From the NCBI GenBank assembly GCA_900088475.1, contig FLMG01003853.1:1-64000 (forward strand): a stretch of DNA of 64,000 nt, written 5' to 3'. Shown piece by piece: positions 1 to 60,381 of this stretch. Under the pieces are notes generated by a model that was not told the origin of the DNA, did not search any database, and worked only from the letters and a program-made list of their open reading frames with translations. Source of the DNA: Hyphochytrium catenoides (Eukaryota; Protista; Hyphochytriomycota). The first letter of the stretch is position 1; each line of letters opens with the position of its first letter. Both the position numbers and the translations under genes were made by a program.

Positions 1-3000
1 CCGCTGATGCCTTCCCTGTCCTGGACGCCAGCTGTGACTAGTTGCATTACGCCACTAGCCGAAGCGCCAGATCCAGTGGAGAGGTACACAGCTCCCCCAG
101 ATGTATGAGTGCCGGCACCTCCACTGACCGTGACGTCGCCCCCTTGAACGGTATCCGAGGCACTTTGTCCTGCGATTATATTGATTGACCCTCCAGCAGC
201 TGTCCCTGGAAGGGCTGCTCCTCCACTAAGTGAAATGGACCCAGCAGCCCCTTCCTGAGCGTCTCCACCACGAAGCTCAATGAGCCCACTGTCACGCGCC
301 CCGGACACTGCGTTCCCTGTCCGTACGAGGATTGAACCAGCCCTGCCACTAGAGGCTTGCCCAGTCAAGAGGGACAAATTACCAGTATGGTGTGTGGCCG
401 AGGATGTACCGATGTCTACATTGCCGCTGCCGGCTTCAGCGGATGAACCACTAAGCAGAGAGAGATGGCCTCCAACGCTTTTCACACTCTTTCCTGCGTA
501 GATCAAGATATTGCCTCCGTTGTCCAGAACCGCTGCCCCGGCGGACATTGCCAGATCTCCCCCGGCACCGCTGCCTTTCCCAATGATGGAACCACTAGAC
601 ATAGATATAGAGCCACCCTTGCTCTTTGATTGTCCGGAGGCAGATCGTAGTGTTATGTTTCCTCCTCGCCCTTCGTTACCCGGAACTCCAGTGAGAATTG
701 ATATGGAACCCGCGCTGTGCCTGTCACTTTGGCCGCTTGCCACAAGAATATCCCCACTACCTCCCATTCCATGTGCATTTCCTGATAACAGTTGGAGACG
801 TCCGGAAGATGCGGATGCAAAGGCGTTCCCGGAGCTAATTGAGACTGGACCGCTATAGCCAGCAAATCCTGAACCACTGGTAATTTGAATTTGTCCTCCG
901 CTTGAAGCGTATCCCGCCGTAGTGCTATCGTTACCGGAACTGATGAACACGGACCCCGCCGGTTCCATTGCTGAGTTCGTACTCCCAGCTATTAGCCAAA
1001 CACTACTGCCAGATATGTTTTCATGTATCTCTGCTGCGCCTGCGGCGACAACGACAGGTCCACTCTGGCCCTGACTAGACTTACCCGAGGCTACGATCAC
1101 CCTTCCTGAGGCTCCGTTGATGGACTCTCCCGAGCGGATTTGCACATCGCCGGAACCTCCTGCTGAAGCTGCGGATGACATCTCCAAGTTGCCAGAAGTT
1201 TGCTTTACAGAGTTACCACTGGTGACCTTTATAGCTGCGGAGCTCTGAGCACTCTCGCCAGTTTCAATGATAACGGCACCACTGCTTGACCTTGGACTTT
1301 TAGCAGACCTAATTTTGATGTCACCACTGCTGCCACCTGTGCCCGCTCCCGAAACAACTTCCACAATTCCACCGTGGGAGGAACTCATACCTGCAGAAAT
1401 ATGAATGCCTGCCCCTTGACTGTTAGTACCCTGCCCTGCGGCAATTTTGACTCCACCTCCACTCCCAGTATCACCGAAAGCAGAACCTGCAGTTAAGCTA
1501 ATGGATCCTCCTGCAGAAGATCCGCTGCCTCCCACCACCGCTAGTGACCCGCCCCTCCCGTTTGCGGAGTCCTTAGTCTCAAGTGATATGGATCCGCTAT
1601 CGCCAATGGAAGGTGATGTCCTAACTACAACATCCCCACTCTTGCCGTTGGTTGATGCGCCACTGCTGAGAATTATATCTCCTCCAAGGGCATCCGTAGA
1701 TCCACCAGCAACCAGCGCTATCTCTCCCCCACTAGCGGACTCACTGGCCCCACCTCTAAGGACTACTTTACCCCCAGAACCAAGGTCCGACGAGCCGGCG
1801 AGAAGCTCCAGATGTCCGCCCGCACTGGAAGAATCTTTTACCGAACTACTGACGAGACGCACGGACGCGGCCAAGGCACCAGCGGAAGCCATTCCGGCAG
1901 ATAAAAGAATGTTTCCTGTCCGCTTTCCAGCAGCCGCACCGCTAACGAGCGAAATGTCACCGCTGGCTGTTGCTACTCCGGTGAGGATACCGACAGCTCC
2001 AGATCGTCCTTGAACATTAGATGCGGTTAGAATTTCAACACTGCCGCTTAATTCTTTGCTAGACGCGCCAGATAGCAGTTGCATTGAGCCTCCAGTTTCA
2101 CCAAACGAGGACCCAGCTTCCAGTAAGACGCTCCCACCAGTTCCAACGGAACCGCTATAAGCCGATCCGGCTTTAATAGCGACACGGCCCCCACTGGCTT
2201 GGCCGAGCGCAGCTCCAGCAGACACCAACACATTTCCAGCCTCTGTTGTGCTATTACTTACAGCAACAGTTATCGAGCCCCCTCGTTCAGAGCCAGCAGG
2301 ACTGCCGGACGAAAGGGCAATCTTCCCTGCTTTCCCCTCCTTTGCCTCGCCTGTGTGAATGTTTAGAGATCCAGAGCTTCCCTGGCTTGAAGAACCAGAA
2401 GAGAGCCATAAAGCTCCACTCTCACCCTCTGTGGTAGGACCTGTGGCCAGACTGATAGAGCCACTAGCCCTTGCACCACCGCTGGAAAGTACCACAATGC
2501 CTGAAGCACTGGACCTCTGGGTGTCCCTAGTGCTGATGTAAACGTTGCCACTGCCATCTGCTCCTCCACCACTGACGAGCTTCAGAGCTCCACCAGAGGA
2601 GGTTAGCCCCAGTCCACCAGAGACTTCGACATCACCACCATTGCCTTTTCCAAGAGTGGAGGGGCCGGCTGCTAACTCTATCGAGCCTCCCTGAGCCCAA
2701 CCCTCAGAGTGAGCGCTCTCTCCAGCTCTCATCACTATAGAAGAGCCTCCAGCACTGTAGCTTTTACCAACAGATAGGGTAATTGAGCCCGCTGCCCCTG
2801 CAGAATTACCACTCGATAGCAGCAAGGATCCCGTAAAAGCTTTGGTGCCGGCAGTAGAAGCCGACCCGACGGAGATATCTCCGGAGGACCCATCCTCGCT
2901 CTTCCCACTCCTGACGGCCACTTGCCCGCTGGTGCTGGTCTCTGACGTTCCGCTTTGAATTTCAATATGCCCTCCATTGCCCTTCTTTGCTGAACCAGCC

Positions 3001-6000
3001 AGGAGCCGGAGGGCACCACCAGTGCTACCCTCTGAAGATCCAGCGGAAAGCATAACCCATCCGCCAGACCCAGAACTTGTTGCAGACATTGAACCAGCAG
3101 TGATTGCGACGGAGCCCCCGGTCGATAAACCAGATGCTCTCCCGGCAGCCAGCAGGATATCACCACTTTGACCCTTCATAGCATCCTCGCTCTCACCAGT
3201 ACTTAGAATAAGCCTGCCACTGCCTCCTCCGACTCCTGACGATCTTCCTGTCATTAACGAAATTGACCCGGATACGCTACCAACTCTACCCGTTCTACCA
3301 GATGATACCTTAATGTCTCCACTATTCATTCCTGACCCAGAGGTAATGCTGATTAAACCTCCCGCTCCTGCTCCTCCAATACCACTTTCCAACTGCAGCG
3401 ATCCACCTTTGTTACCAATCTCTGCATCCCCTGCAAGGATGGCAATCTCCCCTCCCACGCTGTCATGTGATGTTGTTGCACCAGCTGAAAGTAGTATGCC
3501 TCCTCCTTGGCGTCCCCTGGTAATGCCGATCACTCCTGCAATTGATCCACTTCGGCTATCTTCTGACCCAGAGGTGCCAGTGGAAAGTTGGATAGAGCCA
3601 GAACTAGAACGTGCTGCCCTGCCTGTACTGATGGAGATACTACCTGAGCCACCTGAAGATGTCGCCCCACTTCCAAGGGTCAGAGCCCCACTCCTAGTGT
3701 GTCCATCTCCACTTACGGCAAGTACTTCACCTGAATCTCCTTCCATGCTCACACCAGTTCTGAAAGAGAGCCTTCCCGTGGTTTTACCATATGTTGTTCC
3801 TGTTGCCAGGGCTACAGAACCGCTGGATGAGGATGCATAGCCCTGGCCGGATCTGATATTGATGGAGCCCCCCGTGTGGGCGTCAGCGGAGCCTGCTTCG
3901 AGGTCAATACTTCCTCCAAGACCTAGGGATGGTCCAGCAGCTATATAAACTGAGCCGCCTTGACCTTCGGCGGCCACTGCGCTCGCTTTGAGACTGATTG
4001 AGCCTCCGATGGAACTGCCCGACGCCTGGCCAGCCGCCAAGACGATTGAACCTGCTTCCCTTACTCCAGATGAACCTGTCTCCAAGGTCAACTGCCCAGA
4101 AGCTCCGCTCGGGGAGTTTGCAGTTCGAATCAGAACTGCGCCAGATCCTTTCTCACCGGCTTCTGAACGAACGGCGATAAGACCTCCATATCCCGCCGTT
4201 GAAACTCCACCTGACAGGAGAACTGCCCCGCCAAGTCCATCCCCACCAGCTCCTCCTTCGAGAAACAACGTTCCTCCGGAATTTTTGCTAGAACCGGCTG
4301 CAAGACTGATGTTGCCACCTTGCAGGGAAACACCTTGGTCATCTATGACGTCGGATGCCAAATGAATGGAGGGTCCAGAGAGTAAATCACCATTATGAGG
4401 ATAGACCCCGGACGCAATCGTAACAGCACCCCCTCGACTGGAAGATTTAGAAGTCCCACCAGTGAGGATAGACACCGAGCCGCTGAATCCCCTGTCCCCA
4501 GGCGCACCAGAGGAAAGAACGATATTGCCACTATCTTGTCCTGAGACTGTGTCAGGACTCTCGGAAGCGATCAAAACGTCCCCCGTGGCCCCTTTGACAC
4601 TCGAGCCGGATCGCAGCTCGATCGAACCTCCTGTGCGTCCTTTGCTATCCCCCGCTCTTAGGGACAGACTTCCACCGTGTCCTGGCCCCTCATAGTAAGA
4701 GGAAGCTGATCCTCCTTTAATGAGTATTCCTCCTGCCAGACCTCCTTTTGGACCGAGAGAGCCCGCTAAGACACTTATGTTGCCACCAGATGCGATGCCT
4801 TTGTCCCACGTTACCGGTCCTGCCTGGAGCATAATTGAGCCTGACTCTCCTCTCCCAGCTCCCGTCCTCAAGAAAATGTGCCCAGAGGGACCTGTGGATG
4901 CATCACCCGTGTGCACTTGAGCAGAGCCTGACTGTTCCCCTGCCCAACCGGTCATGACGTCGATAGCACCTGAAACAGATTGAGATGTTCCAGTTGAAAG
5001 CGAGAGATTGCCTGACGGCCCTAGGCCGCCGGTACCGGAAAATAGTGATACCGATCCTCCTTTAGAGGTATGGTTGCTGCTACTTATCAATACACTGCCA
5101 CTTTGCGAGCCTTGGCCGCCAAGGAGGTGAAGGTCACCACCACGTCCTGTATAACTTGAACCACCTTCCAGCCTTAGCATCCCCCCAAAGCCGATACCTG
5201 TAGCTGTTGATGACCCAGCCTTGATTCTAACAGATCCACCCGAACCTTGGATGGCCGATGAATCTCCTGCCACCAACTCAATAGCTCCTCCCAGTGGCCC
5301 TCCGCTTGAGCCCACTTTAATCGTAACAGAACCAGCGTTGTTTGAATGTGCCTCTCCAGAGCGGAGGTTCAACCCACCAGATGCTCCTCTCAGCGAGTCA
5401 GCCGATTTCAAAACAAGTGTGCCACTTGTCTTCGCAGCTTGCCCGGAGCCCATCACTACGTTTCCACTTTCACCGTCATGTGAGTGGCCGCTGTTTAGGA
5501 GTAGGCTCCCACTGATCTCTTCTCCACTATCGCCACTCGCTAACGAGAGACTACCACCTTTCGATCCTCTAGACGAACCCGCAGATATAAGAGTTGCACC
5601 TCCCGAAGCGGAAATGCCTGACACAGCAGATCCAGCTGTGATCGTTACTGAGCCCGGATTTGGTCCAGATACAGAAGAAAGCGCAATGTTGCCAGATGCG
5701 CCGCTGACTATATTAATATCGCCACTTTCACCCCCTACTGCGCCTGACCTAGTCGTAACAGTGATGCTGCCACTCACTGCGCTAGACGAGGTTGACGAAG
5801 AGATAGTCACGGTGCCACTAGCACCGTCAAGAGCTGATCCTGACCTCATGACTATAGAACCGCCTAAGCCCGTATTAACATCTCCAGCTGAAAGCTCCAG
5901 AAAGCCACCTTCTGACCACAGTTCGGTAGAGTTCAGGCTTGAACCGCCCTTAATAGTAACAGTTCCTGCCAGACCGTTGGATTCAATCGATCCCCCAATA

Positions 6001-9000
6001 ATGTTTACCTCTCCAGCTTTGCCATAGCGCTTCTGAGTCTTGCCAGCGGCCAGTACGATGGAGCCGCTACCATCAGCGCCAGACCCGGAAGATACTGTCA
6101 CTGTACCCGTGCTTTTGTCCCTGGAATTACCCGTCCCCACTGTTATAGAACCAGACTCGTTCATTACGGTGGAGCCACTTCTCAAAGCTATCTCTCCCGA
6201 CTTAAGGTTAGCGAGGCCAGTTGACAGCGTGATAAGGCCGGAGGACCCTTGTGTGGCGCCACTTGAAAGCCTGACTCTCCCGCTACCCTTAGGCCCATCA
6301 CCACTACCTATCATGAAGTCTCCACTTCCAGCTTGTGAACTTCCGCCACTCGATATATAAACGGCACCACCATTTCCTATTTGGCTAAGGCCACCTTGGA
6401 GCTTCAATTGACCGCCCAATCCTTTGCTGACGCCGTGAGAGGAGCCAGCTTGCAGGATTAGTGAACCTCCAGAAACGGCACTGCTCTGAGATCTGGTGTT
6501 ACCCGCGGAAATATGGATACTTCCGCCGTCTGAACTAGAGCTCTGACCTACTGTGATGTCAACCGACCCTGAGGGACCAAAATTGGAATCTCCTGATCCG
6601 ATAAGGATGCGACCGCTTGGTCCTGTAATGGAACTTGAGGTCTGTAGGAGGAGATGTCCAGTGGACCTTCCCGAGCCAGTTGTAATAGTGATGTTGCCAC
6701 TTTGGTTCCCAGAGGAAGACCCCGACCGAAAGGTCATTGGACCACTTTCCTCACGACCATCACCACTGTAAAGCTCCAATGCTCCTCCAGACGACTCAGC
6801 TGAGGAGCCGGCGATGAGCGTTATGTCTCCTCCTGACCCATAAGACTTCCCGTGTGATGCTGCTGCCATGATGGCAACGGAGCCGCCAGTTTGGCTCGCG
6901 TCATGTTGTGCTCCGGCGGAAAGGGAGATAGACCCACTGCTAGAGCCCTTAGACTCGCCACTACTAATGTTGATCGCTCCACTAGGAGCCTTGCTGGAAG
7001 AGCCAGTGGAGACCTGAATCCTTCCACTTCTCCCTAGCGACGAAGAGGCAGAACTGATTTGTATCTGACTGCCATCTGTAGCTGCAGCTTGAGCTCCATT
7101 TCCAGACGCAATGTATACTGACCCTCCCGAGCCCGCGCCCCCGTCACCGGCTAGCAACTTCACATTCCCACCGATCGATTCTGGGAGAGTAGAGTGCGTG
7201 GCAGATCCTGCCATCAGTGTGACATCTCCAGCCACACCGTTTGACCCCACGAATCCTGACCTCAACGATATGCTACCTCCGGAGGCCTCATCTGCTATGG
7301 CAGTCCCAACACTGATCGTGATGGAGCCAGTCACCTTGGATCCCATGCCACTTGTAAACTCCACAGCTCCAGAACTGCCCCTTTCAGCGTTGCCGCTTGT
7401 GACGGTCACAGCCCCGGAGGATCTACTGCTTGCGCTACTGCCAACCGTGACATTGCCTGATGCCATCTCGGAAACACCACTGACGAGACGGGTACTCCCT
7501 GAGTAATGGCTTCCTGCCCCGGAGGATAGCGTAAGCGAACCTGTCTTGCTAAGACTGTCGCTTGTCGCCACAAGGATGTTACCACTTCTCCTACGGTGTC
7601 CTTGTCCACTTACTATATCCACAGAACCACCGATATCCGCGACACTTTGCCCACCTAAAAGTAATATGGAGCCCCCCATACCACTTTTATTGGTTCTTGC
7701 AGAGCCAGCACTGACTACAACAGAGCCCCCTGCCCCGTTCGTTAGTGTGCTGGATCCTGCGAAGAGCTCGAGGGAACCTCCAGTACCACTGTTACTCTCC
7801 CCAACCTTCGCTACAATAGATCCTGCAGAATCAGTGGAACTGGCTGCGCCTGTCTCTAGGAGGACTGATCCACTCGGGCCATCACTAGCAGGAGATGAGG
7901 CAAAGGTCAGGTTGCCAGTAGTGCGTCCTCTCCCTGACTGAAGACTTATCTTCCCACTGGCCCCTCGTGCAGCTAAGGCGGTAGACACTCTAATGGCGCC
8001 ACTAGAGTGTCCGTCACCACGACCGCTTAATATCTCTAGATCACCACCGTCTGATGCGCTCGATCCAGCCGCAAGCTTCAAAGTTCCACCAGTTCCATCT
8101 TGCCCAAACTCAGCTACAGTCCCCGCTTGGATGACAATCGATCCTCCACGATTGGATTTCGCACCTCCCCCAGAAGATAGGGTAATGTCGCCGCCATGGC
8201 CGTGCTGAGACTCACCAGTTTGCAGCGAAATACTCCCGCTAGGACCTACCGCTGAAGCCCCTGTCCGCACGCTAATCCTTCCGGACAAAGAGCTGACTGC
8301 CTCGTCTGCGGTCGCCAAACTGACGCCGCCCTGAATTTCATTCAATCCACCCCCACTTCCCGATCGTAGAATGACCGATCCACCAACTCCGTAGCTGCTA
8401 TCCCCAGCCTGCAATCTGAGGCTACCACCTCTGGAAGCGGAAGAGGGCTCACTTGTCGACGTAGACTTCAGAGCTGATCCACCCTTCATATAGATATCAC
8501 CGCCGGAATTACTTGGACCCTCTATATCACCGGCAGAGAGCGCAATGGCACCAGCGCGGGAAGCTGTGCCGCCAGACTTACCCACAGAAAAATGCATGCC
8601 TCCAACGTTTCCAAGAGCTGAAGGACCCGAAGATAGAGTTACGGAACCTGATGACCCATGAGAGACTTCTCCGGTTCCGATCGTTAGAGAGCCAGAGGTG
8701 CCATCTGAAGTAGCTGTGGCGAGCAATAGGGAACCGGAGTGTGCACTGGATTTGCCGCTTGCAACTGTTATGTTACCAGACGGCCCGGTGATGGCCATGC
8801 CAGATGACAAAGTTAGAGAGCCACTTGCAAGTTTGCCTTCCGCTGTCACTACACTGATGGCCCCACTTTTGTAGACCAGGCTTGATCCACTCATTATTTC
8901 GACGCTTCCTCCAGTGCCACCTGAGGTAAGACCTCCCTTGATCCTGACCTGACCTCCCCTGTTGCTGTTCTCTTCATTGACCACCGATCCCCCCGTAAGG

Positions 9001-21000: not shown

Positions 21001-24000
21001 GCTCGTTAGCTTTAATGAACCTCCGGTGGCAGACACTGAATTTCCAGCTCTAATACTGACGTTTGAACCTGCAGCAAAGCTATCACCAGACTCAACAAGA
21101 ATGAAGCCCGATTGAGCCTTATCGCTGCTGCTGGTGCTTAGGGTGATACTGCCCGTCAGCCCCACAGAACTTTTCCCTGTGTTCATTGTCAAGCTACCGC
21201 TCGAAGCAGTCTGAGAACTGCCAGAAAAGAGCAGTAGATCACCAGAGTTATCTATTGCGCCTCCCGTAGACAGCTGTAAAAAGCCAGACGAGCCCTTTAC
21301 AGCAGTACCAGTACCGATTTTGACATCCCCAGACAACCCAGATCGTACATCTCCAGAATGCAGACCTACACCTCCACTCTCCATTGCCGAGCCTCCCCCT
21401 GTCATTAGCAGCATCTTTCCAGTCTGTTTGGACTCAGATCTGGCAGTCTGAATGACGACTGAGCCTCCAGGTCCGTCAAGACTAGCGCCGCCGCTAACAA
21501 ATATCATGCCACCGGCCTTCTCTCGCTGGAATGCATCAGCACCCATGATCTCTATAGGAGCAGGACCTCCCAATCCGCTGGTTCCAGGCTGAAGAGAGAT
21601 TTTACCGGCTTTGTTCGAGGATGAGCCTGAAGCCAAAATGATGCTGCCGCTGCTAGTTAAAGCTGTCCCCGAAACCAGTTTAATCCGTCCGCTTTTGTCG
21701 CCATCTTTGGACGATACAAGAATGTCCCCTGTGAGAGTGTTAGAACCTTTTCCCACCGAAAACCTTGCGAAGTGTGCCTGGAAGGAGGCGAGTATATCCA
21801 CCACCAGGGCTTGGCTGTCAAGCTCATGCAGATCCTTGATAGGGCTGGTGCTGCCGGGCATGGCAAAGATACTCTTCTTTACGTACTCTGGAAAGGTTTT
21901 CGCGACTTCTTGGCCGACAAGACCACGTCTAGGTGCTGTCCCTTCACCCAACATAGTCTCCCATTCCTCAGTATATGCTAAGTCATGCACCTCTAGGGTC
22001 TGTAACCTTTGAAGGAGATTTTCCTTATCTACGCTTTCAATCGTAGTAAGCATTCTTTCGTCTGATGGAAGACCAATACGCGGCACAAGCAGCGGCACGC
22101 TGCTGATCAATTTTTCTTCGTTCATCTCCAAAGCAGATTTACGGTCGAGACTGCCCGATACCGACCAGCTGATTCCTGCTTTTGAAGATAGCTGGATGTT
22201 CCCCTCGGATGTCATAATTGCCTGCGCTGTGGGGCTTCCCGCCGCGTTAAGGATAACAGATCCGTCTGCTCTGGTTACTAAAAGGGGCTTGACATCAGTG
22301 GCGAACGACGGCAAGATGCTGAACTCTCCTCCTTTGCCTGAAGCGCTGGTCGAGCCTAGTGCAACGCGGACCGACCCTGCCTCTTGATCACTGCCACCTG
22401 CGCTCACCGTGAGGTTGCCTCCCACTGTACTCCCCGATCCAGCTGTGAGTGAGACTGAGCCTCCAACGCCACCTACTGAAGTCCCTGCAGCGAGGATAAG
22501 ATCTCCGCCAGGTTCACCGGGTGCGTGGGAAATACCCGCGGAAAGCTTCGCAGAGCCACCTTTCCCTGCCCCATCACCAACGGAAAGGGTCAAGTTCCCA
22601 CTTTGACTCTTACCTCTCTCGTTCGTGGACCAAACCGGACCGCTGCTGATAAAGATGCTTCCGGAGGTCTGTTCCTCGGCGACGGATCCCGAACGGAGAG
22701 CAATAGCACCACTACCCTCCTTGTTCTTACCAGCTGCCTGAGTTTGTAACTCAAGGGCTCCATCTGATGCAGATACCATATCAGACCGGTGTCCAGCAGT
22801 CACAAGGATGCGTCCCTCAGGGCTCACAAGAGAAATATCTCCACTTTGGTCTGAGGCTGATCCTGTGATTAGTCGGATGGACCCTGATGTGCTGCCGGAA
22901 GCATCACCTGTCTCTATCAGTACGCCTCCAGATACCGAATCCTCAACAAGAGCATGTGAGGTAGACAGTTGAATCATGCCACTCACTTTCTCACCCTGTC
23001 CTGATGTAAGCGCCACTGAGCCGGCCTGAGAGATCTTGCTTTTACTCATAGAGGAACCTCCGGTGATGCTGACATTGGCACCACTGCCTGTTGCGAGAGA
23101 GCTACCTCCTACAATCTTTATAGCGCCAGCTGGACTAGATGTAGAAGTGGAGTTGCCGCTAGCGATAAGGACACGACCAGAAGCACCGCTTGAGCTTCCT
23201 GACACAATTGATATGCCTCCGGAAGCCCCAACCCCTGGCACAATGCTTGAGGCAGAGGACAAGAGAATAGCACCACTATAAGCTCCCGAACCACTGGTCA
23301 CCCTAACGGCTCCACCTCGTCCTAGAGGAGTTATGGAGTCTCCTGCGTTCAAATCCAGACCTGCCCCGCTTGCATCCTGCTCTACTGCGGATGAAGATCC
23401 TGCTGATAAAATAACGCGACCGGCGGTTCCAGCGGTGGACGACCCCGATCCAATGATGATATCCCCAGTACCTCCAGTCTTACTTGACCCAGAGCTCATC
23501 GTCATTCGTCCACTGCGAGAGCCTGATGCCAGCACTGAAGCGGAAGTCAGATATACGTCCCCTGACTGCAAGTTGCCCATGCCGGAGGAAAACGAAAGTT
23601 GACCTCCTCTCGCAGTATTAGATTCCCCGGCATAGATTTCAACATTTGCACCGTCACCATTTCCAAAAGAAGAACCGCCTTTAATAGAAATGTTGCCAGA
23701 TGATTGTCTGCTTGAACCTGAGGTCAGCTCAATGGCTCCCGAGACGCCAGTTGAGGAGTCACCAGTGTGTAGAGAGATTGTACCTGAGCCAGAGCTTGCT
23801 ATAGAAGGAGTACGGATAATGACGTTCCCGCTCCGTTGCTGCCCTGACGCACCAGACTCAAATAACAATACTCCCCCTCTCCCACTTGAAGAAAACCCAG
23901 CTGATAAGTTGATCGCACCAGCGCTAAAAGCCCCGGCGGAACTGCCTCCCATAATGTTTATAGCTCCTGCTCCTCCAAGATCGGAGCGTCCTGATCTTAA

Positions 24001-27000
24001 CGTTAGTGGACCAGTTGATCCAGCCACGGATGAGCCCGTCTCCAATCGTAACTGACCGCTCACGCCTTTCTTGACATCCGAGGTAGCCAATATGGCAGCG
24101 CCGCTCGAGGCCTCAACCGCTGCTCCAGAAACCATTGTCAGGTTTCCACCATCAGCAGCAGTTGAGCCACCTGCCATAATGTTCACAGAACCACCGTGCG
24201 AATTTTCAGCCTTTCCTTGGCTTGACCCTGCTGTGAGTTTAATTGCCCCACCGACGCCCGAGTGACCCCTATAATCTCCTGCAGCGAGAAAGACGGCCCC
24301 TCCGTAGCTATTGTCAAAGGTGGTGCTGCCAGCTGTCAAACTGATGGTAGACCCATTGAAATTTCTCCTCATTAGTCCGGCGCTGTCAGCGTCAGTTCCG
24401 CTAGAGGCACCACCTGTTAGTACTATATCGCCCGATCTTCCCGCAGAGTTTTCACCGGAGCTTATTTGCACCATCCCGGTACTCGAACTTGGATTTCTAG
24501 CAGCTCCGCTGGACAAAACAACACGTCCACTGAAGCCGAGGTCCGACTTAGCCGTTGTAAGGCGCAGAGCTCCACTGCCGCTGTTTGGTCCCCCTGCTCC
24601 AGTCTTGATAGTAATGTCAGCCCCACTAAAGCCATTAGTAGTCGTGGATCCTCCGGCTAAAGTGATCTTCCCTGGCCTTTGGCCCGAATTGCCAGTCCCT
24701 ATATTGAGGTCTCCAGATGGGCCCTTGTTTGCGCTGCCGGAAACGATGGTGATAGATCCAGTGCTGCCACTATGTGCTGAGCCGGTTGCAAGGGTGACAA
24801 AACCACTGTCTGCCGGGTTAGTAGAGGTAGGTGCTGTTGCAAGGGTGATAACACCAGTGCCACTGCGTTCACTTCTGCCACTGGAAATTTTGACACTACC
24901 ACCTGGAGAGCTGAGCGCTTTCCCGCCGTGGATGATGATTGAGCCACCCTCCTCTACTGGAAATCGCGAAGCGGAATCGCCGCCCAGAAGGCTGACATCT
25001 CCACCTTTTGCGGTGGAGCCCATTCCTCCTTGTATCTGGACCATTCCACCGGGCCCCTTTGCTGAATCACCTGCCTGCATATTTATGGCCCCTCCCAGAC
25101 CATTAGTTGCCACTCCGGCTAGAATGCTAACTGACCCTGACTTCGGTCCGTTAGAGGTTCCAGACGCAAGAACTAGGGGCCCACTTTCGTCCTTGAATGC
25201 AGGTCCCGTTCGTATGTGTATATATCCACTCCTACCAGTCCGTCCAGCTTCTGCAGTTTCGATTTGAATATCACCACTGGATGTTGCTTCACCCCTACCA
25301 GAGTGGAGGAATACGGAGCCACCAAAGCTTGCCTTAGAAAAACCGCCTTGGATGGTTACGTTGCCACCAATGTTAAGCGCCTTGTTTGCACCAAGTCCAT
25401 CTCCCCCTGACAGATGAAGTGACCCTCCTGAGCCACCGGCGGTTTCTGTGTTGGTGCCACTTCCGGGCTTTATTGCTACAGAACCTCCTCGCCCGTTTTG
25501 TGATCTCGAGTCTCCTGCCATGATACGGATAGCACCTCCGAGACTAGTAGTCCCTTGGCCCACTGCCAAGGATATGTCCCCTCCATGTCCGCCAAGAGCA
25601 GGTCCAGTCTGAAAGTCCAAAGCACCACTGTTCCCAGCAGTTGTTGAACCTGTTTTGAGTAAAATAATACCACTTTCTCCCCGCCTTCCTGCGTCCTGGG
25701 TATGAAGAAGCAGGTCGCCACTGGAGGTCGCAGAAGAAAAGCCCGTGCGGATGGCTACCCTTCCACCAAACGCATCATCAGATGTAGTTCCTGCCTCAAG
25801 AGAAATAGCTCCACCTACACCTGCATTTCCGTCCCCTACCTTAAGGTCAATGTTGCCTCCTCTGCCTCTGCTGGCTCGTCCTGTCCTGATAGTTACGGGG
25901 CCGCTATGTCCGCTTGTGGAGTTACCCGAAAAAAGCTCAATACCCCCGCTCACACCTGATCGCCCTGCATTAGCGGTTCCCAACACTAAATCTCCGCTAG
26001 AGGAGTCAGCACCAAAGCCCGTCAAGAGCTCAATGTAACCACCCGTGCTCCGACGCGACCAGCCACCGTTTATCACGACGTTACCACCTACGTCAATCCT
26101 TTCGTTGCCGCCCTGAGCTGCACCGGCAATCATGGAGATGGACCCGCCATTACCGCCATCGGCGTAGTAGGTACTGGTACCCTCTCCGGCTGCGATGACG
26201 ACATCACCCCCTTTCTGCTGCTTCTCACTCGTGTGTCCAGCTTGAAGAGCGATATCGCCGCCATCACCCTTCCTACCGGTACCAACGTGGATAGATATTC
26301 CACCACCAGCTCCTTCATAAGCTGCACCCGACAACATAGAGATGGTGCCGGAGTCTCCTTTTGTGGCGGTTCCTGTGATGATAGATACAGCGCCACTGAC
26401 CCCTCCTTCTCCTGATGATGCTGTAGCGAAAGTTATGTCACCGCTGGAAGTCTGGGTACTATGTCCTGATAGCAATTTTATGGAACCTCCTTTGGCTACA
26501 TCTGTTGTGGATCCTGCCGTTATTGAGACCGAGCCACCATCACCAAGGCTGCCACCTCCCACCAAGACAGATATTCCTCCACCTGCTCCACCACTAGACT
26601 CACCGGTCTCGATTCTGAGGTTGCCGGAGTCACCAAGCGCTGCGCTGCCCGATGCTAGTGTGACGCTGCCACTAGCTCCATGCTGGCCTGAGTCGGCCGA
26701 TGAAAATTTAATAGATCCACTGGAAGCCAGGGCAGAGGATCCTGAACTGATTCTGACTGAGCCACTGGACCCCAACCTGGCTCGTCCTCCTTCTATGTGC
26801 ACTTCCCCACCGCTGTCAAAGCGGCTTTCTCCTTCGGCGACACCACCTGTAATTTTGACGTTGCCGCCATTTCCGCCATCTACAGAATTCTGGCTCAAAC
26901 CATCACCTCCACTAATGCTTACCAAACCCCCCATTTTCCCGGCTGACAGAGTATTGCCAGCCTTTATAGCCAGTACACCACCATTTCCATAGTCACCAGT

Positions 27001-30000
27001 CCCCACCTCAACCTGTATTTTGCCACCCGAGCCATCCCCTGATGTCCCTGTAGTCATCCGTATGCCACCACTCGTACCATGCTGGGACTTGCCGGTCGCA
27101 ACATCAATTCGACCACTAGCGCCGTTCATGCCCGGTTCTCCTGTGGTGACGGCTATTGATCCGCTGAGACCCTCAGCGCTGTCACCAGACGCCAAAAGCA
27201 CACTGCCACCGACGCCTGTTGCAGCAGAGCCAGCCTTCAAGGTCAGCTTGCCACCAAGATCACGAAAAGAGTTGCCAGCACTAGAGCCTGCAACAACGAG
27301 GACATCACCACCATCTCCGCCATTCTCATTATCTGTATTAACCCCTTGGCCTGCTGATAAGTAAATAGCTCCCCCTTTCGAGGCTGCACCTTGAGCAGCA
27401 CCAGGTACGAGCAAGATACCTCCAGCATCACCATTGACGCTCTCCCCAGTCGCAAGTACAACTTGTCCACTCGGACCCGCAATAGCATCTCCGGTTTTCA
27501 GCCGCACCTCTCCTGTGTGTGTTGTGGAAGAGGAGCCAGTGGCCATAAAAATGTCACCGCTTTGCCCAAAGCTCCCCGCGTCATCTGTTACCACTCTCAC
27601 GGCTCCTGAGGATTCATCTGTTGAACGCCCAGAGCTGAGTACAATATCTCCACCTCTTGAGGTCCGGGAAAATCCGGCACTCAGTAAGACAGAGCCGGCG
27701 TAAGGGTTACCCTCTCCAGCCCGGAGGTAGATGTTTCCTCCGCTTCCGTTATCTGAAGTAGGAACGGTGGATCCTGCTTGGAGAATTATTGCGCCACCCC
27801 AACCCGTGCCTAGGCTATCTGAAGATCCTCCCGTGATGGAGACCTCTCCCCCTCCATTTTGTTGGGACTTTCCAGCCACCAGAGCAACATCTCCTCCCGT
27901 CTGACTGGCATCGCCTACCAAGAGTTTAATCGATCCTGACGCTGCACTTTCGGTTCTACCTGTACCGACGGTAACAGCACCAGAACTCCCATTTGACGAA
28001 TCACCAGTCTTCAGGTCCAAAGTGCCAGACCCTCCGGCTGTTAATATTCCTGACGTGGCAGTACCTAAAAAGATGGCCCCAGAGGTGGCTCCTCGACTTG
28101 ATCCAGACCTTAATGTGATTTTCCCTCCAACCTCAGTCCCTGCATGACCGCCCTCTAATAGCAACAGACCGACTTCACCAGACTTGAAAGAGCTACCGGT
28201 GGACAGAATAATGCTACCGGAGACTCCCTTCTCAGTAATCCCTGTGGCAAAACGGAGGTCCCCACTCTGGGCAGCCTCTGTGCTGCCTGTTCCCAAGATA
28301 ATCGCCCCAGTCATTCCACCAGAAGCCTCGTAGGTTGTGAGCCTTATATCCCCGCTGGATGTGGGGCCTGCGCCGCTTCGTAGAGTCATGTGTCCTCCCC
28401 TTCCTAGATTGGAAGACCCCCCGATCAGAACAAGCTCGCCTCCAGTTCCGTTTGGATCGTTGGCGTTACCACTAGCGAGGGTAAGAATACCACCTGCTAA
28501 CAACCCCGATCCAGCAATAATGGAAATTTCGCCACCGGAGCCTTCACGCTGACGTGAGGAGCCCGACAGAAATTGGAGACCTCCGGCTTTGTGACTGGCT
28601 TCACCTGCCGAGATCAGTACGCTTCCACTATCACCCTTGAGCGCCGGACCCGTGGAAAGGAGGAGGTCTCCCGAACTTCCCGCTTGTGCCTTGCCACTGG
28701 CAAGATAAATAGGCCCACTATCCGCCCCCTCAGGGCCAGTGCCACCCCCGGCAGAGGTTATTGAAACTGGTCCAGAGGAGCGTCCATTGTCAGCACCCTT
28801 CCCAGAGGATATTGAAAGGATACCTCCATCGCTTACAGCTGAGTTACCAGCCGAAAGGAGCAGTTTGCCCGCCACATCGGCATGGCTGGTTCCCACCGTC
28901 AGCTCAATGTCCCCGGCAGAGCCACCCTCAAGCGCAGAACCCGTTCTAAGGGTTATTGCGCCACTTCCACCAAAATGGGATAGGCCTGTTTGGAGCTCGA
29001 TGCTACCACTTTGACCATCTATTCCTGGTGATGCAGTTCTCAGCCCTAATTTGCCACTTGATTGTGTGCCACTACCGCCACTTTCAAGTTCAAGGCTTCC
29101 CCCGACCCCCTGTGAAGAGGAGCCGCCCATCAGGGTGACAGTTCCTCCCACTCCGTCAACAGCCTTTCCTGCCTTGAGAGTAATGCTGCCTCCGTCTCCC
29201 AAGTTCGACGTGGCAGCGATGCTGCCTGCAGCAGTGCCAGAACCGTCCCCTGCAGCGATGATCACCGATCCACCGCTACCACCCTGGGGATTGGGGTTAC
29301 TGCCAGCCAGCAAGGAAATCTGTCTGCCAGGGCGATGAGGTGCTACGTCGTCCGAGGCGCGAAGGAGCACATCTTTTGCTGATCTTACTGCAAATCCGTC
29401 CCTGTCGCTCTTCATTTCAAAGCTTACGGATCCTGCCATCCCTTTACGTAGAAAAGAAGGACAAGTTAGATACTGTCAGCCGAGGGGCAGATGAGGGCCA
29501 AACCTTCTTGAACAAGTTCACCTCCCTCACCAAAAGCAGGATCGGGTGTGATACGAATCTTCCCTGTGATGTCCCGTACTGAAGAGAAAGTTGAAAGAAA
29601 AAGCAATGTTAGACCTATCCTATCCTTCTAACTCTCCCGAAACTACTGGTAAGGGGTGCATCAATTTGAAATACCTTCTAGGAAGGAGGTAGGACAGGGG
29701 CCGTCAAACACAAGGCCATCGCAGTCGGAAGAGTAAGCAGCGCTGATAGTGAGGCAAGACTTGGAAGTGGCACACCAAGCGCAGTCCTCAGCCGTAGCGC
29801 ACGTATCGCATGAAGAGTACTGGCTACAGTCGGGAATGACTAATGACAGATGCCCTTGAAGTTAGATATCTGCTCCGGCAACCGCTTGCCACTCAGCATC
29901 GGGAGGATACTTACCTGGACACTGGTTTGCCCCATAAAACCACTCTGCACAAGGACTTCCTGTATTTTCTGGTCCTTCCACGGTTCCTTGCATGCAGGTT

Positions 30001-30297
30001 AGAGTTGAGTGACAAAATCCGCAGCCGGGTGTCGCAAGACAAGGTATGCATGCCTTTACGTCTTGCCTGAAAATAATTAGGAATACGGCAAAAAGTGAAG
30101 TCAATCCATGACCAAACCACAATGGGTATTTTTTTTTGATCTGACCAGTAGTCCCCGTTAGACGTAGCACTGTTTAAGAGCTCGCATGTGACAGATTTAT
30201 TGGAGCCAGAGCTGGACTGTGATGCTGCAGGGAAAGTTAGAACGAATGCCTGCAAAGAGAGGAGCGCTGAAGCGCTCAGGCTTAACGAGGGCCACAT
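1..30297 (-). CDS. Giant secreted fibre-like protein (>= ~10,000 aa, 3'-partial): signal peptide, 2x PSI domain, Gly/Ser beta-repeat arm, internal Peptidase S74/ICA domain, second Gly/Ser beta-repeat arm
   Basis: Hand-spliced exons 30297-30146, 30066-29915, 29839-29675, 29578-29504 and 29441-<1, all with GT..AG introns in consistent phase. They give MWPSLSLSASALLSLQAFVLTFPAASQ...DYW|QDVKACIPC...NQCP|VIPDCSQY...SFLE|VRDITGK...VQE|GMAGSVSFEMK, joining the 6669-aa ORF. Below the N gap (9537-9603) the same repeat continues in the neighbouring frame (STGSVTDAGRSGDLALLTG...) and is still open at base 3 (...SGVMQLVTAGVQDREGIS). The ORF track lists no stop-terminated ORF in that frame. Confidence 0.9.
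9537..9603. other. Assembly gap (67 N) inside the giant exon
   Basis: Run of N. The coding frame differs by one base across it, so the true length is probably a multiple of 3. Confidence 0.98.
21760..22068 (-). other. Peptidase S74 / intramolecular chaperone auto-processing (ICA) domain, MYRF-like, embedded in the giant protein
   Basis: PSDERMLTTIESVDKENLLQRLQTLEVHDLAYTEEW...RRGLVGQEVAKTFPEYVK...IKDLHELDSQALVVDILASFQAH follows the S74 pattern SDxRxK..I..v.....L..l..l....y.Y....G.iAQEV...fPeaV plus a terminal helix. The Ser codon is at 22063-22065 and the Lys position is Leu (22048-22050). Confidence 0.85.
29694..30186 (-). other. Two tandem PSI (plexin-semaphorin-integrin)-type Cys-rich domains at the N-terminus of the giant protein
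   Basis: C...CIPCLATPGCGFCHSTLTCMQG...CAEWFYGANQC and CSQYSSCDTCATAEDCAWCATSKSC...CDGLVFDGPC match the PSI pattern CxxxxsCxxCxxxxxCxWCxxxxxC...C...C. Confidence 0.85.
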
Positions 30298-32634
30298 GGC
30301 CTCGCTGTCGATCTGCGATGCACTCAGACTGGCTTGACCATCCACAGTCAGCGCTCCCTTTGCCAATAGCCCCTTGCCTTTTTTAAACCTGCCACATCAA
30401 ACAGAAACCTTGTTGAGGAAAGATGAGTAAATTGTGCAAGTCGACCTTTTCTAAGAGCTCTCTGTCAGCTTTCTTATTGCCGGTAAGCCCTTCAAGATCT
30501 GAAAATTGGAACTGGATGGCCAAAGTCCCAGCGCCAGGTGAGGCGGCCCGCAATCTAATAATGTGTGCCGTCCTTTGCCTATATGCAGTTGCTTATTCCT
30601 CTCAGTAATTTGTCAATCTCTCGACGAGACGACAAAGTAGCTTGGGATGGCAGCAGCGGCGATGACAGCGTTCGCTATGTGGATGGATCAGCGCCAGCGC
30701 GTCGGAGCTACGGTCTTAGCGAGCATACGTGTATCAAGGCTAGAAGAGCCAACGGCTAGGTTCAATTGGAAGCACATTGCTTCACTGTTATAATATAGGA
30801 GTCTTGTTCGGCTTATCTTCAAAAGGTAGAAGCCAGAGCTGCATTCTACATCCTTTCGCGCCACCTGGTTCTGTTCCAAGACGTGATCGAAAGAATATTT
30901 GGTTTTCAGAACTTTATCTAGATCCAACTATGGCCTTAGAACTTCAATTTCCATACATTTTACACTTCATCATCTGATTCTGGCCTTCAAGCTCTGTCCC
31001 AATCGAGGTCATAAAACAGTTCTGCCACAGAATCTTGTCTGGATCATGTTTAGAATTCAACAGCTAGTTTTTCGGTACCTGTTTCATCATATTCCCAATA
31101 GGTGCGCCTCAGAGGAAACTTCAATCACAGCCGTCTATGTGCAGAGTAGAACACACAGGACTCGACTACTACAGTACAAACCCACACTTACGTCCTAACT
31201 GTACTGTAGGAACTACCTGCTCTTCGCATGTACCGACGTAGAAAACACTGGGGGATTCTGTAGAGGATCCTGGAAGGATATGTGCTGTAGCAAGAAAATA
31301 CACCTTTGTGGTTGCGTTGTACAAGTTTACTACTTCTCGAGGACTAAGCCTTACTACTAGCCTACTTGTGGTAGAACTAAAGGCTTTTCATAGTAACTTG
31401 TACTTGGTCCAGAACTAAAAGCACTGTAAACAGTGCTAATCTTGCAAATATTTTTGCAAACTCGGACTTACTTACCAGAACTGTTAGTGCCTAGGACGTG
31501 GTCTACTCTGTACTGTAATGAAGAGCACAAGCATGACCATGAGCACCATTGTTCTGGTTCTTCGTGTTCGAAGTTGCTGGGCAGTCAGTACAGTTGGCAG
31601 ATCTCTGAGGAGGTAGTCGTACAAGTACAGCTACACCGACTCACACTACTAATCTGCAGTTCCTACAAAGATAATAAGTAAAACCATTGTACAGTACCTA
31701 CTTACTATTACGAGCCATCAGTTCTATCATGCTGTGACGTACGCGTGGGGCCACTTGTAGCTCTACTACTCTGTAGCCCAGTGCTTGTACAACTACCTCC
31801 GCCCAGCCCCAAGTATAAGTAGATATCTATCGACGCCAGACTTTTCTCCTAGCAGGTTAGATTGAATCCTTTTGGCGGGAGATTTGCGCGGCAAATGTCA
31901 ATGATGATAACGACGGCAAGCAGTAGTGGAAGAGTCTCTCTTTACCAGGCCACTTCTCTTAGAAGCCCGTTCTTCCAACTCCTTCCTTCTCCTCCTCCTT
32001 TCCCTCCGGCAATGCTTGCAGGTGAAGGTATTCAGTTCAGGAAGAGTTGGGTCACCATCTTCCAGGACGGGGGCGGTGATGGCCAGCGGGAGGACGGGTG
32101 GAGTGCCTCTGAGGCTGTTGAGGGCTGACAGATGGCGCATTTTGATCGTCATTGAATTGTATATTATTTTTATGTCAGGGCGCCGGAAGTATTGTTGCCA
32201 AGGGGCACATCTTCACGCTGCCATAGAAGTGCACAACAGCTTGCACAACGATGAAGTTGTAAAGCGAAGAGGGAACAGGAGATAGACGAAGGATGGTAGA
32301 TCATAGGATTACAGTATGTGCGCAAGCTAACCGCAACAATGATGTGGACATCAATCAGTGGAGGGCCGTAGCTGACCGGCAGCGAGCCAATACGGTCCCT
32401 GACAAAGGAGGGTGCTCATTCGCTTGTAGGGGTGGTAGTAAGTACTAGCGAGTGCGTCGAGTATATACTAATGTGACGGGTAGCATGACTAAAGAGCACC
32501 AAAGGCCACTCTCAGATTACGGAAACAAGTATCCGAGTACAACTATTGATTTTCCTCAGGAGTAATGGCAGGTAAAAGACGAACCTCCACATATCCGAAG
32601 GGAGTCGGGCTCCTCGTCCAGGATCAACAAGCGC

Positions 32635-34334
<1,700 letters not shown>

Positions 34335-60357: not shown

Positions 60358-60381
60358 NNNNNNNNNNNNNNNNNNNNNNNN
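60358..60381. other. Assembly gap (24 N)
   Basis: Run of N. Confidence 0.98.

What the first reader, a model, noticed from the sequence alone, without database searches (positions are those of the whole stretch)
1..30297. A >=10,000-residue secreted, tail-fibre-like protein in a eukaryote: PSI head, beta-repeat shaft and internal chaperone domain
Seen in the sequence: a signal peptide, two PSI domains, about 9,800 aa of Gly/Ser beta-strand repeats and an S74/ICA domain, with the frame still open at the window edge. Established: ICA domains trimerise and fold triple beta-helices in phage tailspikes/endosialidases and in MYRF, and PSI domains are extracellular adhesion/receptor modules. Inferred: the product is a trimeric filament, on the order of 0.3 micrometre if each ~15-aa unit adds one 0.48-nm rung, tipped with a Cys-rich head. 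It could be a surface fibril, flagellar-hair component, extrusome thread or adhesin. I know of no characterised protein with this architecture. Automated annotation would likely fragment it or call it a low-complexity hypothetical.
Basis: partly seen in the sequence, partly recalled or inferred. Interest (0 to 1): 0.92.

Follow-up and report, generated by a model that had tools for sequence, protein, structure and literature searches.

The report
Giant phage-fibre-like secreted protein gene
A soil protist (probably Hyphochytrium) carries an intact gene for a secreted protein of at least 10,025 residues, with a cysteine-rich tip, about 640 short repeats predicted to form a phage-type three-chain fibre, and one internal phage/MYRF-type chaperone domain; the potato blight pathogen Phytophthora has the same gene, and no member has been studied.

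Summary
On the minus strand, four short exons (start codon at 30297) encode a signal-peptide-like start and two PSI domains. They splice into one exon that stays open to the window edge.

The assembly gap (67 N) is really 159 letters in contigs of three runs. That is 53 codons, so both sides are in frame. The visible product is at least 10,025 aa and about 0.95 MDa.

All four exon junctions are confirmed by intron-free orthologues in Phytophthora infestans and in an unidentified eukaryote. These align in register at 37-39% identity over 1,300-1,500 aa.

The body is about 635 diverged 15-aa units. There is no DNA-level repeat, and no Cys outside the head.

An AlphaFold model of one slice (pLDDT 81) has no intrachain sheets. 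Its only structural matches are chains of triple-stranded beta-helices (VgrG, phage HylP, gp5).

The single ICA/S74 domain (residues 2615-2761) is real. It keeps the catalytic Ser but has Leu in place of the catalytic Lys, so it probably does not cut itself.

Best reading: a trimeric extracellular fibre of roughly 0.3 micrometre. It is cellular rather than viral, of ultimately phage-like origin, and one of a gene family. The scan noted similar giant genes elsewhere in this genome.

Function, C-terminus and transcript remain untested.

The parts
30146..30297 (-). Exon 1: start codon at 30297, signal-peptide-like N-terminus, first Cys of PSI 1
   Evidence: This is the first in-frame ATG after a stop. 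The 15-residue hydropathy mean reaches 1.65. The junction with exon 2 lies inside an uninterrupted frame of the P. infestans orthologue.
29915..30066 (-). Exon 2: PSI domain 1
   Evidence: Pfam PSI scores 16.9 bits, E 0.0085, for the exon alone. The Cys pattern is conserved in L001 and L002.
29675..29839 (-). Exon 3: PSI domain 2
   Evidence: Pfam PSI scores 26.8 bits, above the cutoff of 23.1. The exon 2|3 junction (QCP|VIPDC) is continuous in L001 and L002.
29504..29578 (-). Exon 4: 25-aa linker between the PSI head and the shaft
   Evidence: The GT-AG model reads in frame. It is collinear with the uninterrupted L001 frame.
22144..29441 (-). Start of the giant exon: N-terminal shaft arm, about 2,430 aa, about 158 units of about 15 aa
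   Evidence: It aligns in register with L001 at 38.6% identity and with P. infestans at 37.1%.
21703..22143 (-). Internal ICA / Peptidase_S74-type domain (protein residues 2615-2761): Ser2641 kept, Leu2646 at the catalytic Lys position
9604..21702 (-). C-terminal shaft arm, first part (same exon)
9537..9603. Assembly gap: 67 N stand for 159 real letters (53 codons), which keeps the frame
   Evidence: In one search, contigs of X1, X2 and X3 each bridge the gap with 159 letters between.
1..9536 (-). C-terminal shaft arm, second part: 3,178 codons, open at the window edge (C-terminus not in the window)

Best explanation
This is an intact cellular gene for a secreted protein of at least 10,025 residues.

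Shown:
- One continuous frame, with the gap resolved to 53 codons.
- Four GT-AG introns whose junctions are confirmed by intron-free orthologues.
- Two PSI domains holding all 16 Cys.
- About 635 diverged 15-aa Gly/Ser units with super-repeats of 9 and 27 units.
- One internal ICA domain of the phage-tailspike/MYRF type.
- Register-specific conservation with Phytophthora infestans and with another eukaryote.

Inferred mechanism:
- The chain enters the ER.
- Three chains are brought together and set in register by the ICA domain.
- The repeats wind into a triple-stranded beta-helix of the gp5/VgrG/HylP kind. One 15-aa unit adds about 0.48 nm, giving an N-terminal arm of about 75 nm tipped by three pairs of PSI domains and a C-terminal arm of at least 225 nm.
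- The catalytic Lys is Leu here, while the P. infestans orthologue keeps both Ser and Lys. The ICA therefore probably stays uncut, as a permanent trimer node between the two arms.
- The deep divergence of the units (42% identity or less to each other, yet 37-46% to the same unit in other species) probably prevents out-of-register pairing.

The most likely role is a structural or adhesive extracellular fibre of the cell surface, wall or cyst coat. The exact location is unknown.
For: - Frame and gap.
- Exon model. It is validated by L001 and by P. infestans L002.
- PSI.
- ICA.
- Lys replaced by Leu against a family with 37/42 Lys and 30/42 Ser. S587A and K592A abolish MyRF cleavage (PMC8326128).
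- No DNA tandem repeats.
- Internal identity of 33-42%.
- In-register orthology: 962 vs 719 bits and 857 vs 678 bits.
- Allelic variants: 14 synonymous against 16 non-synonymous, where 27% synonymous is expected by chance.
- Fold: AF2 pLDDT 80.8 and pTM 0.67, with DSSP finding no intrachain secondary structure. Only 5 of 48,161 chains reach Z>=2. They are the VgrG spike, three phage HylP tail-fibre hyaluronidases and one Streptomyces hyaluronidase (4ufq) whose fold I did not check.
- Atlas neighbours: DUF2345, HylP, Gp5_C and S74 phage proteins.
- Cellular context: enolase and BRCT genes next door, introns, and two alleles at half depth.
Against: - No transcript evidence: no RNA run was listed.
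- The trimer could not be modelled. The structural Z-scores are low (4.7 or less), and Foldseek found nothing in the PDB or the Atlas.
- The signal peptide was not tested with a predictor, and its n-region has no positive charge.
- The C-terminus lies outside the window (one search was blank), so an anchor, a second ICA or other domains are unknown.
- The content of the 159 gap letters was not seen.
- Loss of cleavage is inferred from one residue. Another base could substitute.
- The function rests on analogy only.
Confidence: 0.62

Rival explanations
1. The shaft is a single-chain beta-solenoid, or a YadA-head-like beta-roll of about 15 residues per coil. The protein is then a monomer, or a trimer of side-by-side solenoids, rather than an intertwined triple helix.
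For: - A 15-aa period with one x-hydrophobic-x-hydrophobic-x strand per unit resembles 14-16-aa coil solenoids. That comparison is from my own knowledge of the YadA head, insect antifreeze proteins and ice-nucleation proteins.
- There is a weak Fil_haemagg hit at E 0.67.
- A YadA-like phage protein appears at E 7.6 in BFVD.
Against: - The AF2 monomer model at pLDDT 81 shows no intrachain sheet at all. A solenoid would show one.
- Foldseek finds no solenoid in the PDB.
- All structural and feature neighbours are triple-stranded helices.
- An ICA domain is a trimerisation device.
Confidence: 0.12
2. The gene is an endogenous viral fibre gene, from a polinton-like virus, a virophage or a giant virus, rather than a host gene.
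For: - S74-tipped modular fibre proteins of up to 3.9k aa are common in polinton-like viruses integrated in protist genomes (PMC12220804).
- The H. catenoides genome holds NCLDV insertions (PMC5795050).
- Repeat and ICA relatives occur in tailed phages.
Against: - There are four spliceosomal introns.
- The neighbours are housekeeping genes: enolase, BRCT, an FAD monooxygenase and a purple acid phosphatase.
- Two alleles sit at half depth. The reported viral scaffolds of H. catenoides have very low SNP frequency.
- Collinear orthologues exist in P. infestans and in another eukaryote.
- The PSI head is of eukaryotic type.
- Only the flank to the right of the gene could be inspected.
Confidence: 0.05
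3. It is an intrinsically disordered, heavily glycosylated Gly/Ser-rich wall or mucin-like protein without a regular fold. On this view the repeat pattern is low complexity.
For: - Gly plus Ser make up about 40% of residues.
- There are no Pfam hits on the shaft.
- AFDB models of relatives superpose poorly, with TM 0.14-0.33.
- There are 57 N-x-S/T sites.
Against: - The alternating hydrophobic positions recur every 15 aa.
- 22 Gly columns are nearly invariant across 38 slices.
- pLDDT is 81.
- Conservation over 1,300-1,500 aa with few gaps is register-specific. Disordered low-complexity sequence does not keep that.
Confidence: 0.06
4. The structure is the same, but the role is specific: a component of the tinsel flagellum's hairs (for example the terminal filaments of the tubular mastigonemes), or an extrusome thread.
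For: - Hyphochytrium keeps only the hair-bearing anterior flagellum (PMC5795050).
- The family is found in flagellate stramenopiles.
- An unchecked scan note reports a paralogue with a mastigoneme-type EGF head (s1-347894).
Against: - Known stramenopile mastigoneme proteins are EGF-like proteins (bioRxiv 10.64898/2026.09.11.750887). This protein has no EGF domain.
- No S74 protein is mentioned in that paper's text on the zoospore extracellular-vesicle and flagellar proteomes.
- Atlas neighbours include diatom and green-algal clusters.
- There are no expression data.
Confidence: 0.12
5. It is an assembly artefact or a dead gene.
For: There is a gap inside the gene. The sequence is repetitive at the protein level.
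Against: - Independent contigs of three runs match at 99% or more and close the gap in frame.
- There are no DNA tandem repeats.
- About 29.5 kb are free of stops.
- Orthologues are conserved in register.
Confidence: 0.02

Closest known systems
Phage tailspikes and tail fibres with a C-terminal intramolecular chaperone (K1F endosialidase 3gw6, T5 L-shaped fibre pb1 4uw8/8hqz, phi29 gp12 3gud, S16 long tail fibre 6f45)
   Same: The ICA domain is homologous by profile and by fold. It sits next to a Gly-rich stalk predicted to be a triple beta-helix. Similar repeats occur in uncultured tailed-phage proteins.
   Different: This is a eukaryotic, intron-containing, secretory gene. It is about ten times longer. 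The ICA is internal and followed by more than 7,200 aa of further stalk. The catalytic Lys is replaced. It has a PSI head in place of a virion-attachment domain. No enzymatic or receptor-binding head was seen.
MYRF (myelin regulatory factor), PDB 7dc3
   Same: It is the best sequence and structure match of the ICA (E 8.6e-4 alone, 1.4e-16 for the family profile; TM 0.67). The ICA is mid-chain in a eukaryotic protein that enters the ER.
   Different: There is no Ndt80-type DNA-binding domain and no transmembrane segment in the visible 10,025 aa. MYRF cuts itself with a Ser-Lys dyad, and here the Lys is Leu. The MYRF stalk is a few turns long, not about 640 units.
Triple-stranded beta-helices: T4 gp5 C-terminal needle, T6SS VgrG spike (6sjl), streptococcal phage hyaluronidase HylP (2c3f, 6wv2, 2wb3)
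   Same: These, plus one Streptomyces hyaluronidase (4ufq), are the only solved chains that match the slice model at Z>=2. Their families are also the nearest named neighbours in the Atlas.
   Different: The Z-scores are low. The unit here is 15 aa, against 8 aa per face in gp5/VgrG (the 8-aa figure is from my own knowledge). The length is greater by two orders of magnitude.
Fibre proteins of polinton-like viruses in protist genomes (PMC12220804)
   Same: They are large modular proteins in protist genomes ending in a Peptidase_S74 domain, and are thought to form fibres.
   Different: Those are viral genes of up to 3.9k aa with laminin-G or collagen modules and a terminal S74. This is a host gene with introns, PSI domains, a Gly/Ser shaft and an internal, probably inactive S74.
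Uncharacterised 'Peptidase S74 domain-containing proteins' of oomycetes (P. infestans PITG_01491 / D0MTD8, Aphanomyces, Achlya, Nothophytophthora)
   Same: They are true family members. The P. infestans locus is a collinear orthologue with a PSI head, shaft and ICA at the matching place.
   Different: They are annotated only as short fragments. The P. infestans ICA keeps both Ser and Lys. None has been characterised, and no paper was found.

Membership tests
[quoted passage not shown] | Sequence match to the family model | tested here: met
   Pfam PF13884 scores 20.2 bits alone, just under the cutoff of 22. The profile of 42 relatives that includes this domain hits MYRF ICA 7dc3 at E 1.4e-16, and also phage fibre ICAs. 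There are 115 relatives at E<=1e-3, many with Pfam S74.
[quoted passage not shown] | ICA fold | tested here: met
   In the AF2 model the ICA core has pLDDT 84-95. The top PDB matches are 7dc3 (TM by target 0.67, rmsd 3.0), 3gw6, 4uw8 and 3gud.
[quoted passage not shown] | Ser-Lys catalytic dyad (S911/K916 in endoNF, S587/K592 in MyRF) | tested here: not met
   Ser2641 is present but the Lys position is Leu2646 (PSDERML against the family motif PSDxRIK). K592A abolishes MyRF cleavage (PMC8326128). It is a member by homology and probably not an active peptidase.
[quoted passage not shown] | Homotrimerisation | not testable with these tools
   Only single-chain prediction was available.
PSI (plexin-semaphorin-integrin) domain | Pfam PF01437 match and a Cys-rich pattern of about 50 aa | tested here: met
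   Domain 2 scores 26.8 bits, above the cutoff of 23.1. Domain 1 (exon 2 only) scores 16.9 bits. There are 16 Cys in residues 38-150, conserved in L001 and L002.
Triple-stranded beta-helix fibres (gp5_C / VgrG DUF2345 / HylP type) | Three intertwined chains, with no intrachain sheet and each face built from all three chains | tested here: inconclusive
   The monomer model has no DSSP structure at pLDDT 81. The only matches at Z>=2 are the VgrG spike, three phage HylP chains and one Streptomyces hyaluronidase, with Z 4.7 or less. The Atlas neighbours agree. The trimer itself was not modelled.
MYRF family | Ndt80-type DNA-binding domain upstream of the ICA and a transmembrane segment downstream | tested here: not met
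   The shaft has no Pfam domain. There is no TM-like segment in the visible part.
Viral (polinton-like virus / NCLDV) fibre gene | Location inside a viral element, intron-free, next to capsid or packaging genes | tested here: not met
   The gene has introns, cellular neighbours and two alleles. The flank beyond position 1 was not seen.
Stramenopile mastigoneme proteins (Mas / Ocm / SIG1 type) | EGF-like domains | tested here: not met
   The head is PSI, not EGF. Known mastigoneme proteins carry three EGF-like domains.

The most novel reading that the evidence does not exclude
Pseudofungi, and probably other protists, own a domesticated, phage-derived class of micrometre-scale triple-beta-helix fibres. 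These are single genes of 5,000 to more than 10,000 codons. Internal ICA domains serve either as self-cutting joints (Phytophthora) or, after loss of the catalytic Lys, as permanent registration knots (this gene). The fibres would build a so far unassigned extracellular structure, such as the terminal filaments of tinsel-flagellum hairs or a cyst or adhesion coat.
Probability: 0.25. Interest if true: 0.88.

Novelty: new variant of a known kind. Interest (0 to 1): 0.72.

Why it matters
If the model holds, this would be by far the longest beta-helical protein known to me. It would also be a clear case of a phage tail-fibre building principle (Gly-rich triple helix plus intramolecular chaperone) turned into a host-encoded extracellular fibre in eukaryotes.

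The family is conserved in oomycetes, including major crop and animal pathogens. There it is annotated only as short hypothetical fragments, so a whole class of surface structures may be missing from secretome and cell-wall studies.

Two orthologues differ at one catalytic residue: an intact Ser-Lys dyad in P. infestans and Ser-Leu here. This gives a natural experiment on ICA domains as cutters versus permanent trimer nodes.

The register-specific conservation of about 640 diverged repeats raises a testable question: how do very long homotrimers avoid misregistration?

Tried and rejected
- Pfam on the three big pieces gave nothing. The ICA only appears when scanned alone.
- The word-based homologue search gave nothing for the ICA in long proteins. 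It gave only two weak hits for a repeat slice. It gave nothing for the C-terminal part, which I tried in order to recover the window's own full-length product and its C-terminus.
- No RNA run was listed, so splicing was tested by homology instead.
- Foldseek on the PDB and the Atlas shape search found nothing for the shaft model. AFDB matches were driven by sequence, with TM 0.14-0.33.
- I looked for a 3-unit periodicity that would fit three faces per turn. The unit-level autocorrelation is negative at lags 3-5 and peaks at 9, 18-19 and 27-28. The data therefore support only 9- and 27-unit super-repeats.
- I searched for further hidden ICA domains with the family profile. There is only one in the visible 9,802 aa.
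- Literature searches for S74 in oomycetes or mastigonemes, for PITG_01491, and for the L001 assembly accession found no relevant paper.
- The organism behind L001 (GCA_024449685.1) could not be identified.
- The plus-strand ORFs of 216-318 aa inside the gene are antisense to the giant frame. I did not analyse them and take them to be non-coding.
Full report
**1. What is in the sequence**

The gene lies on the minus strand. One reading frame is open from 29475 to 9604 (6,624 codons). A second is open from 9536 to position 3 (3,178 codons) and has not ended at the window edge. Gly is 21-22%, Ser 18-21% and Ala 10%. The big exon holds no Cys in its coding part. The G+C content and GC skew of 1-30,000 differ from the rest of the window, as expected for such codon content.

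**2. The assembly gap, tested first**

Contigs of three runs of the same organism (X1, X2, X3) were laid on 7000-12000. Each bridges 9536|9604 with 159 letters between, where the assembly has 67 N.
- 159 letters is 53 codons.
- The last codon of the upstream part ends at 9604 and the first codon of the downstream part starts at 9536.
- The apparent frame change is therefore an artefact of the guessed gap length, and the true sequence is in one frame.
- The 159 letters were not printed, so a stop inside them cannot be formally excluded.
- Depth is even. The contigs agree at 99% or more. Two allelic contigs at about half depth occur at 8241-8399.

**3. The 5' end**

By eye I placed GT-AG introns of 79, 75, 96 and 62 nt. 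The exons are 30297-30146, 30066-29915, 29839-29675, 29578-29504, and 29441 onward. The spliced product reads without a stop into the giant frame.

The N-terminus (MWPSLSLSASALLSLQAFVLTFPAASQ...) is hydrophobic, with a 15-residue mean hydropathy up to 1.65. No signal-peptide predictor was available.

The two Cys-rich modules are PSI domains. Pfam PF01437 scores 26.8 bits (cutoff 23.1) for exon 3 and 16.9 bits for the exon-2 part alone. All 16 Cys of the visible protein lie in residues 38-150.

No RNA run was listed. The junctions were therefore tested by homology:
- In an unidentified eukaryote (L001, GCA_024449685.1), PSI 1, PSI 2, the linker and the first repeats stand in one uninterrupted frame. 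They align collinearly across junctions 2|3, 3|4 and 4|5.
- In Phytophthora infestans (L002, DS028119.1), a signal-peptide-like start, PSI 1 and PSI 2 are uninterrupted and cover junction 1|2.

The visible product is 6,794 + 53 + 3,178 = 10,025 residues, about 0.95 MDa, with pI about 6.1 and 57 N-x-S/T sites. It has no transmembrane-like segment.

**4. The shaft**

- Tandem Repeats Finder finds nothing at the DNA level. The repeats are old, and a collapsed or inflated assembly is unlikely.
- At the protein level the period is 15 aa, for both identity and hydrophobic positions.
- A simple dynamic-programming segmentation gives 429 + 206 = 635 units. The modal length is 15 (46%) and the range 11-24. 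The unit form is [S/G]-G-x-[IV]-x-[ILF]-x-[STA]-G followed by a variable Ser/Gly-rich loop.
- Runs of 'SG' and 'GG' units alternate. Unit-level autocorrelation peaks at lags 9, 18-19 and 27-28, strongest in the last 3,178 aa. There is no peak at lag 3.
- Any 300-aa slice aligns with 60-80 other slices, but at only 33-42% identity.

**5. Conservation**

The N-terminal 1,500 aa align in register with L001 at 38.6% identity and 67 gap positions. That is 962 bits, against 719 bits for the best out-of-register alignment. One 360-aa slice reaches 45.7% with 3 gaps, which is higher than to any internal paralogue.

The P. infestans gene aligns in register at 37.1% with 32 gaps over 1,340 aa, 857 against 678 bits. 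Its ICA lies at the matching place. Individual units therefore have their own conserved identity across species.

Among 30 allelic or strain differences in 7000-12000, 14 are synonymous, against 27% expected by chance. This is a weak sign of purifying selection.

The P. infestans gene spans more than 15 kb and runs into an assembly gap. It is annotated as a 2,616-aa model plus PITG_01491 of 392 aa.

Other named relatives are hypothetical 'Peptidase S74 domain-containing' proteins of Aphanomyces astaci, A. euteiches, Achlya hypogyna and Nothophytophthora. Atlas clusters point to diatoms, oomycetes, green algae and tailed phages.

Unchecked notes of this scan report further giant paralogues elsewhere in this genome.

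**6. The ICA domain**

Only one stretch departs from the Gly/Ser composition. The evidence for it is:
- Scanned alone, it scores Pfam Peptidase_S74 20.2 bits (cutoff 22, E 7.5e-4) and hits MYRF ICA 7dc3 at E 8.6e-4.
- An exhaustive HMMER search finds 115 cluster representatives, 69 of them at E<=1e-10. Most carry the same Gly/Ser repeats on both sides.
- The profile of 42 of them hits 7dc3 at E 1.4e-16, and also the phage fibre chaperones 6f45, 3gud, 8hqz and 8jov.
- The AF2 model has an ICA core of pLDDT 84-95. Its best PDB matches are 7dc3 (TM by target 0.67, rmsd 3.0 A), endoNF 3gw6, T5 pb1 4uw8 and phi29 gp12 3gud.
- The domain is residues 2615-2761 (window 21703-22143). It is the only one in the visible protein.

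The family motif is (P/S)-S-D-x-R-I-K, and here it reads P-S-D-E-R-M-L. The nucleophile Ser2641 is kept, and the general-base Lys is Leu2646.
- In the family, 30 of 42 domains have Ser and 37 of 42 have Lys.
- The three ICAs of the L001 gene are S+K, A+K and D+K.
- The P. infestans orthologue is S+K.
- In MyRF, S587A and K592A each abolish cleavage (PMC8326128).
- The repeats resume within about 10 residues after the last ICA helix, in this protein and across the family.

**7. The fold of the shaft**

I modelled residues 901-1260 of the big exon with AlphaFold2. The 38-row alignment combined internal paralogous slices and slices from relatives.
- The model has mean pLDDT 80.8 and pTM 0.67, yet DSSP finds no secondary structure in the single chain.
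- Foldseek finds nothing in the PDB.
- VIA-align against 48,161 chains finds only five at Z>=2: the VgrG spike helix (6sjl, Z 4.7, rmsd 2.4 over 110 residues), three streptococcal phage hyaluronidase tail fibres (6wv2, 2c3f, 2wb3) and a Streptomyces hyaluronidase (4ufq).
- From my own knowledge, VgrG and the HylP proteins are trimeric triple-stranded beta-helices. In these a single chain has no sheet of its own, which explains the DSSP result. I did not check the fold of 4ufq.
- The Atlas feature and structure searches name DUF2345 (VgrG), HylP, Gp5_C/Gp5_trimer_C and S74-bearing phage proteins as nearest families.
- BFVD gives three uncultured tailed-phage proteins at E 4e-6 to 5e-4.

These scores are individually weak, but they agree with each other and with the presence of a trimerising ICA.

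In the VgrG superposition, 110 target residues (8 per face, from my own knowledge) cover 202 model residues (about 13.5 units). This suggests one unit per face, that is about 0.48 nm rise per unit. About 640 units then give about 0.31 micrometre: about 75 nm before the ICA and at least 225 nm after it. If one unit spanned two faces, the fibre would be twice as long. All of this is inference.

**8. Context and rivals**

The next genes are cellular: enolase (32635-33576), a BRCT protein, an FAD monooxygenase and a purple acid phosphatase.
- Viral fibre gene: the cellular neighbours, the introns, the two alleles and the collinear orthologues argue against it. Such S74-tipped fibres are published for polinton-like viruses (PMC12220804), and H. 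catenoides has NCLDV insertions (PMC5795050).
- Single-chain solenoid: the lack of any intrachain sheet in a confident model argues against it.
- Disordered mucin-like protein: the register-specific conservation argues against it.
- Role in flagellar hairs: not excluded, but known mastigoneme proteins are EGF-like proteins.

**9. Verdict**

Three corrections apply. The ICA is internal and probably non-cleaving. The gene belongs to a conserved but uncharacterised family in pseudofungi and other protists. The function remains open.

Untested: the transcript, the C-terminus, the trimer, the localisation, and the content of the gap.

Noticed in passing
window 9537-9603: The gap written as 67 N is 159 letters long in contigs of three runs. 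The assembly's apparent frameshift is an artefact of the guessed gap length.
   Followed up: yes
window 8241-8399: Two contig versions differ at 5 of 159 positions. Each sits at about half depth in X1 (165 and 241 against about 400). The locus looks diploid and heterozygous, unlike the low-SNP viral scaffolds reported for H. catenoides.
   Followed up: partly
window 3-9536 (last 3,178 codons): The unit-level super-repeat is clearest here. Autocorrelation of unit type peaks at 9, 18-19 and above all 27-28 units (about 410 aa). This suggests that the C-terminal arm grew by duplication of 27-unit blocks.
   Followed up: partly
L001:5176-5178 and L001:9900-9910, 15140-15300: The orthologous giant gene in GCA_024449685.1 has an in-frame TAA inside PSI 2. 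It also has frame changes, one of them next to a run of G. These are either assembly errors or a decaying copy. The gene carries three ICA domains, of which only the first has both Ser and Lys.
   Followed up: partly
L002 (P. infestans DS028119.1:1906220-1927568): PITG_01491 (392 aa) and the neighbouring 2,616-aa model are pieces of one gene of more than 5,000 codons. That gene has a PSI head, shaft, intact ICA and further shaft, and runs into an assembly gap at L002:15610.
   Followed up: partly
window 10778-11551, 12359-13192, 14405-15163, 24311-25267, 26342-26992 (+ strand): ORFs of 216-318 aa lie antisense to the giant exon. I did not analyse them and take them to be non-coding.
   Followed up: no
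window 32635-33576 (-): The enolase C-terminal domain (E 1.6e-146) lies about 2.3 kb upstream of the giant gene's start, on the same strand. Further cellular genes follow: BRCT at 36265-37254, an FAD monooxygenase at 41200-42756 and a purple acid phosphatase at 43453-44112.
   Followed up: partly
window 45570-45630 and 60358-60381: Two further assembly gaps lie outside the finding.
   Followed up: no
run X4 (soil metagenome): A soil metagenome run holds 6% of the sampled words of 26500-30400, but no contig was laid on 7000-12000. It may hold the same or a closely related organism in soil.
   Followed up: no
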